From the NCBI GenBank assembly GCA_904063045.1, contig CAJFCJ010000001.1, positions 2,108,001 to 2,172,000 of the forward strand: a stretch of DNA of 64,000 bases, in the 5' to 3' direction. Below the pieces are notes generated by a model. That model was not told the DNA's origin. It made no database searches and saw only the letters and a list, made by a program, of their open reading frames with translations. Positions within the stretch are counted from its first letter, which is position 1. Each line of letters opens with the position of its first letter. The DNA is from Dimorphilus gyrociliatus (taxonomy: Eukaryota > Animalia > Annelida). A program made the translations under genes and the position numbers. Shown here piece after piece: positions 48,756 through 54,430 of this stretch.

Positions 48756-51592
48756 TTAAGCGACAGCAGAACTTTGAGCTTTCAGTTCTACTGGTTCACT
48801 TTCCTCCTCCTCTTCGGCTATATCTACTATAATATGCGTTTCTCTCTGCGCTTTCTTCCTAGCTACAAAGTTCTGCCATGTTCTCTGAATAATTCTAGCG
48901 CAGACCATTTCTCTTTGTCTCTTCAACATTGATGATGTAGGCTTATAGTTTGGTCTATCATTTACGGCTTTAACTTCACCCATCTCCCCTTCGTCTATGG
49001 TTCCGAGGAAGTTTTTAGTGAGTGCGTCTAGAATATCGACACAATGAACTAGTTCGTCTTCACATATTGGAATATTAAGTTGGACGAGTTTAAAATGATT
49101 TGGTAGTGGTATACGAAGGGGTTCTTCTAGTGTATCAACAAATTCGTGCAATTTTGTATAAGGTATATATTGAGTCGCCTCCTCGTCAAACTTTTCCCAA
49201 ATTTCGTAATACATATCAAAGTCATCTTGTGTAAGTCCTTGCTGAACATCCTCCGTAGCTTGGCTAAAGTTTTCGAGGATCACAGCAATAAACATATTCA
49301 TAACGATGAGGAAGCTGACTACTAAGTAACTGACAATAAAAAAAGTAGCCAAAGCCGCATTACCGCAATTACCATTCGGTAATTCTTTTGTTGGGACGGG
49401 ATTGCAATCTACCTCATTCATTAAGCCTGCTAAAACACCATCCCATCCAGCACTAGTTGATACCTTTAGAAGTAAAAGTTTTTCATTAATACAACTTATC
49501 TATTTACAGTATTTTATAAAGATGCTTTTTACCTGGAATAGCACAATGATCGATTGAAAGAATGTTTCAAAGTTGAACATGTCGTCTATTCCATGTGTAT
49601 GTTTAACATGCATAAAGAATGACATTCCGAATATGGCATAGATGAACATGACTAGAAAGAGTAGCAATCCGATATTGAACAAGGCGGGCATTGACACGGC
49701 CAGACTGAACAACAACGTTCGGATCCCTTTTGCAGATTTGACTAGCCTTAGCACCCTACCCACACGGAAAACTCGGACTACTCTTAAAAGTGTTGGCGAG
49801 ACAAAGTAACTAGATATTATATCCTTCATTGTCAGACCGAGAATCGAGAAGACAACGACGACAAAATCGAATACATTCCAAGGTTGTTTAAAATAGTACC
49901 AACGTAATCCTATGATTTTCATGACGGCTTCCAATGTAAAAACGACAATGAATAGTAGATTAATTTGGCTAAGGGCTGTTTCAACAGCTTTACTCTGTCC
50001 ATAATGTTCTAAACCCATTGCAACCATGTTTAACATAATGACAATCATAATACCAATATCAAACTTTTGGTTTGTCGTTAATTTGAAGAAAAATAAGGCT
50101 AATTTGAGCTATTTAAGAAGAAAACAACAATATTAATTGTATGACAGTTTTGCCAAATGTTTAGATTTTCTCCTCTCACCTTTGGTTTTGGAATAGGCTT
50201 TTGAGGGGCCTTCGAACCCAGTTTTTTCATGGCGTTGTAATATTTCTTCTGATCTTCCGTCATAAACATCTCTAAGCTACCTCCCGCCTTAATTTTTTTT
50301 ATCAGATAGTGAATAGGTTGGAAAATAGGTTGAAAATGAAAACTTACTTTCTTCTTTTGCATGTTGAAATTGTCTATTATAACACCAATGAATAAATTAA
50401 GAGTAAAGAAGGCACCAAAAATGATGAATAAGACGAAATAGAAGTGCATATAGACTCTCTCTTCGAACTTGGGTTGTAGACCTTTCTGTTAAAACCATTT
50501 GGGAAAAAAATGGAACAAAGAAAAGAGAACATTAATAAAACCTCATTATGAAAGTAGTATATTTAAATAAGAAACTGGGCCGATAACTGATGCATAACCA
50601 TGAGAGAGGATAGAGAGAACGTAGTCAAAAGTAAAACAAGGGAAAATCATAAAAAAATATAAGAACAAATGAAATAATAATATATAGGTATAAGACAATC
50701 CAAACAGATATGTAACAGAAAGCTAAGACCAATAAAAAAAAGATGAAAAGGGAAAAGAAAAACGGGTCAGCACCTCTCGGCTATCCGTTGCGTCTGCCAT
50801 AATATCCATCCAACCTTTAAAAGTCGCCTGCAAAAGAAAAAAGGAAGAGTGATTGGAAAACGATGAGGAAAAAGACGGGCTGTTATAGTGATTTTTTTTA
50901 TTCATAATACAGCGTGATAAAGCGGAAAAATATAAAAGCAGATTACAAAGTACTTTGAAAGAGTAAAATCGAAAGTTCGTTTTAGCAAGATTGAAGACCC
51001 AATTATGTCTTTTCTACCCTTAAAAACTCCTTTATTTAACCTATGGATTTTATGCATAAATATATAACGCAAAGCCAGGATTCCATCCCAAGCTCTCTTT
51101 TATAAATATAGCTCAGTTGTCCAAAGAAACACGGTAAAGAAATGATGAAAAACTGGGAGAAAGATTTAGATAAGTGTAAAAAAAAAGCAACCTCGATGAA
51201 TGACGAATGTATTACAATTATATATCTAATGTATTATTTTACATATAAAATAGATTTAGTTAATTTTAAGGAAGTTTAATACTGAATTTATTTACATATT
51301 GCATAACATCTTACTTTTAGAACTTTCGACATTTTCTTTTAAAATGTAAAATAAGTTGTTGATTTTTTGAAATAAAGGATTAACTTTTGTGTTCGTTTTA
51401 TATAGTAAACAGTATAAAAACATTAAAAAAGGGAAATTCTTTGATAGCTTGAGTGATGAACGCATAAAGCGGAAAAAGTTGCTTTAATATATAACTAAGA
51501 AAGATATAGTTAAGTGATATTTGACAAATTAAAAATAATAAATACTTGAAATGAAGATAGATAGATTGACAGAGACAGAGACAGAGAGAAAG

Positions 51593-51625
<33 letters not shown>

Positions 51626-51628
51626 CTA

Positions 51629-51659
<31 letters not shown>

Positions 51660-54430
51660 TATATATTTATACATTATAAAAAGATAAAATGTTTCCGCTC
51701 TTTCACCTTAGCACCACTATCTACGGCGTCGTGCATAATTTGTAGCCATCCTTTAAATGTAGCCTGGTATGACAAGCCGATTGTTTGACATGTTTGTTCA
51801 TTTTGCTTTTATTGATTTTATTTAATTTTTAAAAAAGAGGATAAAGTAAAGGTGTAAATAGGAAAGGATAGGATGATTGGACTTGCTGAGGACTGTTGTT
51901 GTAATTTTAAGAAATTAATAAAAGGTATTTAAAAATAATATCTGAGAAAAAGCAGGACTGAGTGATGAAGTGGAAGAGGAGGATGAAGGCAAGAGGAAGA
52001 AAGATACAGATTCTTTTTTAAATGGGAAAATGATATTATTAAGATGAGTGATTTTTAGTAGGGATGAGTGATTGAGATTATATTTATTAATATACAGTAT
52101 ATATCTAAATAATAACTTACCAGTTGGAGAAGTGCCAGAAGGCTCATTAGGACGTTATCAAAATGAATTCGAGAATTTTTCCATGTGTAGTTATAACCTG
52201 CTTTTGATAAATTCATGCAAGTAGCATAATCGGGAACATGGCTGGTGTTCAAACGTTCGTCCTTTTCATTTACGCATTTGTAAAATCTACCACTAAATAA
52301 TTGAACGCCCATAATTGCAAATATCAACCAAAAGACAAAGCAGACCAATAATACGTTAAAAATGGATGGTATAGCTTGAATTAAAGCATTCACGACCACC
52401 TTCATAGATTCCCATCTGGAGACGGCTCGTAGAGGTCTGAGAGCCCTCAGCGTTCTTAACGCTCTAAACGCTGATATATTACCTAATCCTGATTCCTCAG
52501 CGGCTAAACTAACTAAGGATATGGCGACGATTATAAAATCCAACCAGCACCAAGCGTCTGTAAAATATTTCTTAAAACCATAGGCGGCCCATTTAACAAG
52601 CATTTCAAAAGCAAAGATTACGGTGAAGACCTTATCCATATATTTTAAAGCCAATCTTAAAGTTTGTCTTTGTGGTAGATGTACGTCCTCAATAGCCAAA
52701 GTTAAAGAAGAGATGACGATCATGACGATGATGAAAGTTTCAAAGTATTTGTGTTCTACCAATTGATAAGTATAACACCGAAAAGACCACCATTTTTTCC
52801 CCAGTGGCGTTTCGTTAAGACTTGTACAGCATGCAGATTTACAGAGGAAGCTTTGGAAAGAAATATAGATTTGTTATTAATCGTTTTTGCTATATTTGGT
52901 TTCGCTGATTTACCTTTGCATACAACACTTTGGGCAGCACTCATCCGGATATCTGACGAAAATAACGTTAACTTCGTTAATTTCCGGTTGTTCGTTAGGA
53001 TCAATGGGCCCCTTTTGCAATTGGGAATCCTGAGAACCTAGTGAATATGTCGAAGTAGCGCCTCCTATTGACTGCGAGAAGGACGGATAGGTTCGTGTCT
53101 CATAGGAGTCGACCGATTTGGAAGCAGATGTTGATGAGACCACAGAAGCTTTGCTTTCCTTCTCCTTTAAGGAATTCCTTTCTTCATCCTCCTCTCTTTC
53201 ATCTAACGAATCAATTAGATGATAATTAACCTCCTTTAAGTACTAAATTATAAATATTATTTATCCGGATAATATTTAATTTATAAGGGATAAGATATCT
53301 AGAAAACTATCGTAACACTCTATCTAATTGATTGAATATTCATTATCGTAAAAGTCAAAGGGTTGATTCGATAATTCAATACTTAATACCAAATCAAATT
53401 TGGATGCTAAACAAATCAACTTATAACGACTTTTCATGCAATAAATAAATAAATAAATAAACCAACAAAACTGCAAAAACAAGAAAAGAAAACGAAAAAA
53501 TCAGGTCTATATAATTCTTCATTTCAACTGCAAATTTGTACAAAATTCAACAAAATCAAATGTTTTTTTCTATAACAATTAAAAATAAAATTTAATAAGA
53601 CAAAGAGAAGAGAAAATAAATATTTATTAAAGAAAAAAGGATAAGACTATTCCTCACTAGATGGCATTGATTTGAAATCTTTATTACACTTGCACTATGC
53701 TATATATGAGATGGCTAGTGCATAAAGAAAAGAGATTGAAAATGGTCGAAAAAAGGGCAAAAAAAATCAATGTGCTGCTCCACAACTGGTAACATGATTT
53801 CTTTGACGAAAGTCATATTCAAAGATGTTGAAAATTTACACTGGAATCATCTATGAAAAATCCCATGCTCAAATAAAAGATATAAAATCTGATATAGAGA
53901 GGATAACATTAAATACCATTAATTATAAAAGCAATCGACTATCAAGCTGATACTAGGTACAAATAGAAACACTATATTTACTATACTAGACATTTCTCTG
54001 TACAAGTATGACCTGAATGGTGTTTCTTGTATAAATTAACATACCGTGAGCTAAAATTGGTACATATCCAACTTTCGACCCTTTTACGAGTCTTACTTGC
54101 TGACCATCTTGAAGAAAAAAACACAAAAGGAAAAATGGTTTAAATTCTCTAGTTATAGCTAATTTCATGTTCGTTAATACTACAAAAAGAACGATATTAG
54201 AAAATAACGTGACGGAGATGAAATCTTCAGCCGACTATCTAAATACGGATATGTTTTCTTAATTCTCATAATGTTGTTGTGTCTTATATACAGATATTCA
54301 ATGAAATCATAATAAATTTTAAATAAGAGGAAAAGAATAGGGGGAAGGAGAACAAAGAATGGAAGGCAGCCAGAATGGAAATAAGATAAAAAGAAATATA
54401 TAAATGAGTAGGAGAGGTGGGGAGGGGGAC

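What the first reader, a model, noticed from the sequence alone, without database searches (positions are those of the whole stretch)
50774..51763. Duplicated, probably mutually exclusive selectivity-filter exon in Nav domain III
Seen: two intact phase-0 exons lie between the DIII-S5 loop exon (ends 52121) and the DIII-S6 exon (starts 50485). A = [20 protein letters not shown] = [18 protein letters not shown]. Both keep the DEKA lysine. Including both would duplicate the pore helix, so either/or use is inferred. Established: the two residues after KGW (MD in vertebrate Nav1.4, M1240/D1241; IQ in insect para) line the outer vestibule, belong to the outer carboxylate ring and affect TTX/saxitoxin binding. 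The mutually exclusive Nav exons I know (vertebrate 5N/5A and 18N/18A, insect c/d and k/l) affect S3-S5 segments, not the filter. Inference: one gene can switch between an insect-like LQ...HD vestibule and a vertebrate-like MD...AD vestibule, which could tune conductance, selectivity or toxin resistance by splicing.
Basis: partly seen in the sequence, partly recalled or inferred. Interest (0 to 1): 0.9.

Follow-up and report, generated by a model that had tools for sequence, protein, structure and literature searches.

The report
Twin pore exons in worm sodium channel
The only nerve-type sodium channel gene of this small marine worm has two intact copies of the tiny exon that builds part of the ion pore, both kept by selection in a related species. 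The worm can therefore probably make two channels that differ at a known toxin-binding spot, but I could obtain no RNA data to show this.

Summary
On the minus strand, exon A (51707-51763, 57 nt) and exon B (50774-50827, 54 nt) lie between the DIII exon ending at 52121 and the S6 exon starting at 50485. Both are phase 0, have AG/GT sites and encode ATFKGW plus pore helix P2. The gene is the genome's only Nav1 (DEKA) gene.

New evidence:
- An independently assembled genomic contig from a related species (L001) keeps both exons and their splice sites. Changes are mostly synonymous (A 5 of 6, B 3 of 4), while the introns are unalignable. A dead duplicate or an assembly artefact is therefore very unlikely.
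- B is the ancestral type (16 of 18 residues match octopus). A is derived: it has Q where rat Nav1.4 has D1241 and is one codon longer.
- A leech paralogue has one copy in its DNA, and mollusc and nemertean protein models show one version.
- RefSeq isoforms of a copepod para gene swap a larger DIII pore segment.
- NALCN has published alternative pore exons.

Either/or splicing remains inferred. No spliced transcript was found by other routes.

Verdict: a probable new variant of a known kind, with moderate to high interest.

The parts
52121..52762 (-). Upstream constitutive exon: DIII S1 to S5, turret and pore helix P1, ending ...LLALLQL|gtaagt. Its 5' boundary is approximate.
   Evidence: open frame, donor. 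(best hits are Nav channels; Helobdella 65% identity). (86.9% nt identity to L001). (55 synonymous versus 15 non-synonymous codon changes).
51764..51800 (-). Conserved 37 nt of intron just upstream of exon A. It includes a pyrimidine-poor acceptor (tcggcttgtcataccag).
   Evidence: 92% identity to L001 while the rest of this 357-nt intron does not align. Alignment.
51707..51763 (-). Exon A (57 nt, phase 0): [19 protein letters not shown]. This is the derived copy, with Q at the position of rat Nav1.4 D1241, and it is one codon longer.
   Evidence: (6 nt changes versus L001, 5 synonymous and 1 A-to-T residue change). (P of at most 1 non-synonymous among 6 random changes = 0.0012).
51683..51706 (-). 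Exon A donor (gtgaaagagcggaaac...) and conserved intron start. This is one arm of a possible RNA helix.
   Evidence: 22 of 23 nt identical in L001. (duplex with the element upstream of B: -20.4 kcal/mol, reached by 7 of 500 shuffles).
50905..51000 (-). Conserved non-coding element 80-170 nt upstream of exon B. It has a 42-nt run identical in both species and contains TTTTCCGCTTTATCAC, which is complementary to the exon A donor.
   Evidence: 80-95% identity against a 35-55% intron background..
50774..50827 (-). Exon B (54 nt, phase 0): [18 protein letters not shown]. This is the ancestral-type copy, with a strong polypyrimidine acceptor and a weak donor (gtgctg).
   Evidence: (4 nt changes versus L001, 3 synonymous and 1 M-to-I change). 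(P = 0.02). (octopus [18 protein letters not shown]). (Helobdella has a single 54-nt exon).
50348..50485 (-). Downstream constitutive exon: P2-S6 linker and DIII S6 ([17 protein letters not shown]...DNFNMQKKK|gtaagt).

Best explanation
The window's single Nav1-type (DEKA) sodium channel gene carries a tandem duplicate of the ancient 54-nt micro-exon. That exon encodes the last two residues of pore helix P1, the domain III filter turn (FKGW, with the DEKA lysine) and pore helix P2.

Shown:
- Both copies are intact, in phase 0 and flanked by AG/GT sites.
- Both are kept by purifying selection in a second species, together with intron sequence next to them.

Inferred:
- One copy or the other is spliced into each mRNA, because two filter turns in a row could not build a four-fold pore.
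- This would give two channels that are identical except for the outer vestibule of domain III.
- B is the ancestral form: M-D after KGW, ...DSRE, with a carboxylate at the position of rat Nav1.4 D1241.
- A is a derived form: L-Q after KGW, H for A four residues on, ...DSGAK. It is one residue longer and has two fewer acidic residues (and a net charge about two units more positive).
- The DEKA ring is unchanged, so the likely consequence is not a change of ion class. More likely effects are on guanidinium-toxin affinity (saxitoxin most of all), divalent block and unitary conductance.

How the exon is chosen (inferred):
- The choice is probably regulated. A has a poor acceptor, B has a strong acceptor and a poor donor, and both have conserved intron flanks.
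- One candidate device is a helix between the exon A donor and a deeply conserved element upstream of exon B. It would hide the A donor and make B the default. This part is only a lead.
For: Anatomy and phases.

Nav1 identity: the filters read D, E, K, A and there is an MFMT gate and an IQ motif. The best homologues are Nav channels. Only one Nav1 locus is in the 77.9-Mb genome; the next best match is 37% identical.

Conservation in the independent contig L001:
- Exon A has 6 changes, 5 of them synonymous.
- Exon B has 4 changes, 3 of them synonymous.
- All four splice sites are kept.
- The surrounding introns are unalignable (35-55% in a forced alignment).
- Neighbouring constitutive exons are 87-97% identical.
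- The chance of so few non-synonymous changes is 0.0012 for A and 0.02 for B.

Conserved intron flanks and the 42-nt identical run upstream of B.

B matches the cephalopod sequence at 16 of 18 residues, and the leech has a single 54-nt exon.

The micro-exon aligns without gaps to [18 protein letters not shown] of solved human Nav structures.

The two residues after KGW set saxitoxin affinity in mammalian channels about 250-fold (PMC7481244).

Precedents for swapping pore-loop exons:
- NALCN exons 15a/15b and 31a/31b (PMC3557258).
- Salmon-louse para RefSeq isoforms X5 versus X6.

Donor/element duplex: -20.4 kcal/mol in the window and -17.6 in L001, reached by 7 of 500 shuffles.
Against: - No spliced protein fragment from this species or a near relative appeared in the protein searches. 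Two metagenome scans were blank.
- Both exons are multiples of three. Including both, or skipping both, stays in frame, so nonsense-mediated decay cannot enforce exclusivity.
- The A-B intron is 879 nt and both introns are ordinary GT-AG. Steric or U2/U12 incompatibility is therefore excluded as a mechanism.
- The duplication is seen in only two closely related genomes. A leech paralogue has one copy in its DNA, and the mollusc and nemertean protein models examined show one version, though their genomic DNA was not scanned.
- The RNA helix has no compensatory change; the one difference in L001 weakens it. It is not in the minimum-energy fold of the whole L001 interval. The window also has a second, non-conserved partner.
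- Insect channels with Q at this position are toxin-sensitive (my own knowledge). The size of any toxin effect is therefore uncertain.
Confidence: 0.6

Rival explanations
1. Only exon B, the ancestral type with the strong acceptor, makes the working channel. Exon A is rarely used or serves as a regulatory decoy, and its inclusion lowers the output of functional channel. Its conservation would reflect a role in the RNA rather than in the protein.
For: A has a pyrimidine-poor acceptor and B a very strong one. A is the derived copy. Conserved non-coding blocks are common in this gene's introns, so conservation alone does not prove coding use.
Against: Five of the six changes in A between the two species are synonymous, and the frame, the lysine and both splice sites are kept (P = 0.0012). 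That pattern points to selection on the protein. Including A does not break the frame, so it cannot act as a poison exon.
Confidence: 0.15
2. Both exons are spliced in together, constitutively or often, giving a domain III loop 18-19 residues longer with two FKGW turns.
For: A+B stays in frame (57 + 54 nt). Several RefSeq models of the salmon-louse gene carry both pore copies in tandem. A helix joining the A donor region to the region upstream of B could bring these two sites together.
Against: None of the roughly 270 full-length relatives fetched has two filter turns, except those louse models. Sister isoforms of the louse models carry one copy or the other. From general knowledge of Nav structures, each domain contributes one P1-filter-P2 unit, and a second could not be placed in the pore.
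Confidence: 0.05
3. One copy is a dead duplicate, or the duplication is an assembly or haplotype artefact.
For: None beyond the prior that small tandem repeats are sometimes artefacts.
Against: The copies differ at 15 of the first 48 nt and in length, and their flanks are unrelated. The same arrangement is in an independent assembly from another sample. Both copies are intact, with synonymous-biased divergence.
Confidence: 0.02

Closest known systems
NALCN alternative pore exons (15a/15b in domain II; 31a/31b in domain III), Senatore et al. 2013, PMC3557258
   Same: Tandem duplicated, mutually exclusive exons that encode the re-entrant P-loop of one domain of a four-domain channel. The exon junctions are ancient. 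The pairs occur in invertebrates, including annelids, and are lost in the leech.
   Different: In NALCN the swap changes the filter residue itself (E versus K), and so the ion class. Here the DEKA lysine is kept in both copies and only the outer vestibule and P2 helix change. The gene is Nav1, not NALCN. NALCN splicing was shown by cDNA; here there is no RNA evidence.
Salmon louse (Lepeophtheirus salmonis) para, RefSeq isoforms X5/X7 versus X6/X8/X11
   Same: It is a Nav1 gene in which annotated isoforms differ only by a swapped domain III pore segment that keeps FKGW (ATFKGWLPIMNDAIDSRD versus AIFKGWTGVLYDALDSSG).
   Different: The swapped unit is about 65 residues (turret, P1, filter and P2), not an 18-19-residue micro-exon. 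It is an arthropod, so the origin is independent. These are computed gene models, some of which carry both copies. I found no paper describing it, and its DNA could not be fetched.
Known mutually exclusive Nav1 exons: vertebrate 5N/5A and 18N/18A, insect para c/d and k/l
   Same: Tandem duplicated exon pairs of equal or nearly equal length in Nav1 genes, used one at a time (PMC8383430 and PMC3805903, listed).
   Different: Those encode voltage-sensor or S4-S5 segments and tune gating. None covers the filter or the P2 helix.
Primate Nav1.7 domain III T1398/I1399 versus M/D in other isoforms
   Same: The same two positions directly after KGW, and a natural variant that removes the carboxylate. 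STX IC50 is 702 nM versus 2.8 nM, and is restored by T1398M/I1399D (PMC7481244).
   Different: In primates the variation is between paralogous genes, not between splice forms of one gene. The residues are TI, not LQ.
Invertebrate Cav3 exon 12a/12b (domain II turret), Senatore et al. 2014 as cited in PMC6259924
   Same: Alternative exons in the pore module of a four-domain channel that change permeation without touching the filter ring.
   Different: It is in domain II, in the turret rather than the P-loop, and in a calcium-channel family. It shifts Na/Ca selectivity, which is not expected here.

Membership tests
Nav1 voltage-gated sodium channel | Four homologous domains with filter residues D, E, K, A | tested here: met
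   DI TQDYWEN (59846), DII CGEWIES (56188), DIII TFKGW (both exons), DIV TSAGWDG (49457).
Nav1 voltage-gated sodium channel | Fast-inactivation motif in a short III-IV linker, and a C-terminal IQ motif | tested here: met
   [21 protein letters not shown] at 50269 and IIQRTW at 48890; gapless alignment to solved human Nav chains, E about 1e-66 for the leech orthologue.
Tandem duplicated mutually exclusive exon pair | Adjacent homologous exons of equal or nearly equal length, in the same phase, each with its own splice sites | tested here: met
   57 and 54 nt, phase 0, AG...GT on both, 879 nt apart; 12 of the first 16 residues identical.
Tandem duplicated mutually exclusive exon pair | Both copies kept under purifying selection in related species | tested here: met
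   This rests on one related species only.
Tandem duplicated mutually exclusive exon pair | mRNAs contain exactly one of the two exons | not testable with these tools
No spliced product was found.
Alternative selectivity filter of the NALCN kind | The two exons differ at the high-field-strength filter residue (E versus K) | tested here: not met
   both exons encode FKGW, with the lysine.
Docking/selector RNA control of exclusive splicing | Conserved complementary intron elements, with competing pairings supported by covariation | tested here: inconclusive
   Both arms are conserved and the duplex is -20.4 / -17.6 kcal/mol, reached by 7 of 500 shuffles. However, there is no compensatory change, only one conserved partner, and the helix is absent from the minimum-energy fold of L001.

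The most novel reading that the evidence does not exclude
A miniature annelid with a single Nav1 gene uses strictly exclusive, cell-type or stage-specific splicing of a duplicated 18-19-residue filter/P2 micro-exon. A conserved RNA helix that masks the exon A donor sets the choice. The result is two sodium channels with different outer-vestibule charge: one ancestral, and one with lowered saxitoxin/tetrodotoxin affinity or altered conductance. Copepods reached the same solution independently with a larger domain III pore exon.
Probability: 0.2. Interest if true: 0.8.

Novelty: new variant of a known kind. Interest (0 to 1): 0.62.

Why it matters
Sodium-channel diversity at the pore is usually explained by gene duplication (vertebrates) or point mutation (toxin-resistant clams, snakes, newts, octopus). 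Known Nav1 splicing tunes gating, not the pore. A splice-selected outer vestibule in an animal with only one Nav1 gene would be a third route. It would give a natural two-state experiment on residues that set saxitoxin affinity and vestibule charge. It would also extend the pore-exon swapping known from NALCN to the classical sodium channel. The genome's size and contig count match a published annelid assembly that comes with stage-specific RNA-seq, so the central claim can be tested in an afternoon. The copepod gene models suggest the phenomenon may be wider and overlooked. Annotation pipelines also readily skip or double this micro-exon.

Tried and rejected
Local comparisons were made on the pieces beside them. 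Two local scripts that translated the whole window for motif look-up read them, but sent nothing out.
2. A degenerate pattern for the spliced junction LLALLQL|ATFKGW in metagenome contigs gave 0 hits. A pattern for an exon A-like sequence also gave 0 hits.
3. Three protein searches aimed at transcript-derived fragments or full-length models of this species found none. The nearest hit was a genomic reading frame from a relative (P0001), which was useful for conservation instead.
4. The representative search gave full-length relatives, but no annelid isoform pairs.
5. The salmon-louse gene DNA could not be fetched. Two isoforms are not on record, and the longest product's gene spans 156 kb.
6. 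Mechanisms for exclusivity that I considered and rejected:
   - Steric hindrance: the intron is 879 nt.
   - U2/U12 incompatibility: all sites are GT-AG.
   - Frame-based decay: both exons are multiples of three.
7. The RNA helix did not appear in the minimum-energy fold of the whole A-to-B interval of L001, so it is kept only as a lead.
8. Literature searches for a Nav1 domain III pore-exon swap found nothing.
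Full report
OBSERVATION. On the minus strand the window carries a compact sodium-channel gene, from about 48756 to beyond 63000. Two small exons lie between the large domain III exon ending ...LLALLQL|gtaagt at 52121 and the S6 exon beginning aacag|AAAGGT at 50485.
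- Exon A is 51763-51707 (57 nt) and encodes [19 protein letters not shown]. Its flanks are ...cataccag| and |gtgaaa.
- Exon B is 50827-50774 (54 nt) and encodes [18 protein letters not shown]. Its flanks are ...ttttgcag| and |gtgctg.
- All four junctions are phase 0. The S6 exon ends at 50348.
- There is no third copy in the window.
- The copies share 33 of the first 48 nt. Of the 12 residues they share among the first 16, five use different codons. The flanks are unrelated. This is an old tandem duplication, not a recent repeat.

WHAT THE GENE IS. The four filter positions read D (TQDYWEN, 59846), E (CGEWIES, 56188), K (TFKGW) and A (TSAGWDG, 49457). An MFMT inactivation motif lies in the III-IV linker, and there is a C-terminal IQ motif. 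The best homologues are Nav1 channels of a leech, arthropods, vertebrates, nemerteans and molluscs. A search of the whole assembly (77,897,245 bases in 349 contigs) finds one locus. The next best match to domain III is 37% identical. This is therefore the animal's only Nav1 gene. The assembly statistics match the ~78-Mb, ~350-scaffold assembly of the miniature annelid Dimorphilus gyrociliatus (PMC7854359). This identification is an inference, because the tools hide names for the window's own genome.

ARE BOTH EXONS ALIVE? The protein search returned a genomic reading frame 93% identical to the upstream exon (P0001). Its 4310-nt Logan contig (L001, sample SRR23372228) covers the region from upstream of domain III to just past exon B.
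- Both exons are present in the same order.
- Exon A differs at 6 nt (5 synonymous, one A-to-T residue change in the tail). Exon B differs at 4 nt (3 synonymous, M to I after KGW). All splice sites are kept.
- The neighbouring constitutive exon is 86.9% identical, with 55 synonymous and 15 non-synonymous codon changes.
- In contrast, the introns cannot be aligned except next to the exons. Forced alignment gives 35-55% identity.
- If the observed number of changes were placed at random, one or fewer non-synonymous changes would occur with probability 0.0012 for A and 0.02 for B.

Both exons are therefore under selection as coding sequence in two species, and the arrangement is not an assembly artefact. 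This is the main new result.

WHICH COPY IS ANCESTRAL, AND HOW WIDE IS THE DUPLICATION?
- The leech Helobdella has a single 54-nt exon (ATFKGWVDIMNKAVDSKE) between short introns. No second copy appears even in a very permissive scan.
- All fetched isoforms of octopus, abalone, oyster and Biomphalaria, and the Lineus isoforms, carry one version. Single models of Lottia, Lymnaea and Tubulanus also show one version. Only the leech was scanned as DNA.
- Exon B matches octopus ([18 protein letters not shown]) at 16 of 18 residues and has the ancestral length.
- Exon A is one codon longer, ends GAK instead of RE, and has LQ where B has MD. Its Q matches insect para (IQ).

B is therefore the ancestral type and A a derived copy. 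The duplication pre-dates the split of the two dinophilid-like genomes but is not general to annelids.

WHAT THE DIFFERENCE SHOULD DO. The micro-exon aligns without gaps to [18 protein letters not shown] of solved human channels. It covers the end of P1, the filter turn and helix P2. The two residues after KGW correspond to M1240/D1241 of rat Nav1.4. In primate Nav1.7 the natural replacement of MD by TI raises the saxitoxin IC50 from about 3 nM to about 700 nM, and T1398M/I1399D reverses this (PMC7481244).

Isoform A removes that carboxylate (D to Q). It also replaces the RE tail with GAK and adds a histidine. That leaves two fewer acidic residues, and a net charge about two units more positive, around the outer mouth. 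The DEKA ring and the outer-ring acids of domains I, II and IV are the same in both.

My inference is that the isoforms differ in guanidinium-toxin affinity, divalent block and unitary conductance rather than in ion class. From my own knowledge, insect channels with Q at this position are still toxin-sensitive. The size of the effect is therefore open.

HOW THE CHOICE MIGHT BE MADE. Exclusivity cannot come from frame (57 and 54 nt), from intron size (879 nt) or from incompatible spliceosomes (all sites are GT-AG).
- Exon A has a pyrimidine-poor acceptor.
- Exon B has a very strong acceptor but a poor donor.
- Both exons sit in islands of conserved intron: 37 nt before A, at least 23 nt after A, about 200 nt before B and about 100 nt after B.
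- The block 80-170 nt upstream of B contains a 42-nt run identical in the two species, which is more conserved than synonymous sites. This block includes TTTTCCGCTTTATCAC, complementary to AAG|GTGAAAGAGCGGAAAC, the exon A donor.
- The duplex is -20.4 kcal/mol in the window and -17.6 in L001. It is the best partner in the neighbouring introns and is reached by 7 of 500 shuffles.

Such a helix would hide the A donor and make B the default. Against it:
- The single difference in L001 weakens the helix rather than compensating.
- The window has a second, non-conserved copy of the motif at 51461-51478.
- The minimum-energy fold of the whole L001 interval pairs the donor elsewhere.

I keep the helix as a lead at about one chance in four. 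An earlier first-stage note (s1-081166) had proposed competing pairings in this intron. I tested only this one pair.

WHAT COULD NOT BE DONE. The decisive evidence is RNA. No spliced fragment from this species appeared in three protein searches. Two degenerate scans of metagenome contigs were blank. Either/or use therefore remains an inference from protein architecture and from the precedents below.

COMPARISON WITH WHAT IS KNOWN. The papers I could search describe mutually exclusive Nav1 exons only in voltage-sensor or S4-S5 regions. None describes a pore-loop pair in Nav1. The principle is nevertheless established in the sister channel NALCN. There, tandem exclusive exons encode the P-loop of domain II (15a/15b; flatworms, molluscs, annelids, echinoderms, hemichordates) or of domain III (31a/31b; myriapods and chelicerates). 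These switch the filter between E and K (PMC3557258). The present case differs because the filter lysine is kept.

I also found that RefSeq isoforms of the salmon-louse para gene differ only by a swap of a ~65-residue domain III turret-plus-P-loop segment (X5 versus X6). Other models carry both copies in tandem. This is an independent arthropod analogue that I did not find described in papers. Its DNA could not be fetched.

VERDICT.
Both exons are real, functional-looking and conserved, in the sole Nav1 gene, and differ at an established toxin-binding position. Exclusive use, regulation and functional effect are untested.
- I put 0.6 on regulated either/or use, 0.15 on B being the only working exon with A regulatory or rare, 0.05 on joint inclusion, and 0.02 on a dead copy or artefact.
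- It is a new variant of a known kind (pore-exon swapping in four-domain channels) and can be tested directly with existing RNA-seq.

Noticed in passing
Proteins P0512-P0521 (Lepeophtheirus salmonis para, RefSeq): Isoforms X5 and X6 differ only by a swapped ~65-residue domain III turret plus P-loop. X7 and X8 additionally swap a domain III S3-S4 segment, like the insect k/l exons. X1-X4, X9 and X10 carry both copies of each in tandem, probably a modelling artefact.
   Followed up: partly
window 53900-54110 (minus strand): A small, 97% conserved exon (about 54047-54110, [26 protein letters not shown] linker) is followed by a ~70-nt non-coding block almost identical in L001. This pattern is typical of a regulated cassette exon.
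   Followed up: partly
window 53304-53453 (minus strand): A 150-nt intron block is 85% identical to L001. It has small indels, and the one open frame is broken by them, so it is a conserved non-coding element of unknown role.
   Followed up: no
window 51461-51478 (minus strand): A second copy of TTTTTCCGCTTTAT lies in the A-B intron and could also pair with the exon A donor (-19.2 kcal/mol). It is absent from L001.
   Followed up: partly
Proteins P0121 and P0271 (Lineus longissimus Nav1, isoforms X2 and X1): The isoforms differ by a 5-residue insert (YPLLQ) and by F/L and G/S substitutions 17 residues apart in the III-IV linker. This could reflect an alternative linker exon.
   Followed up: no
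Protein P0140 (and the pore region of other gene models): This gene model joins ...LALFQV directly to IDIQPQRE, so it skips the pore micro-exon entirely. It shows how easily annotation misses this 54-nt exon.
   Followed up: no
whole assembly G000: The assembly is 77,897,245 bases in 349 contigs, which matches the published ~78-Mb, ~350-scaffold Dimorphilus gyrociliatus assembly (PMC7854359). Runs holding parts of the locus include marine and coral metatranscriptomes, which fits a small worm of marine aquaria and sediments.
   Followed up: partly
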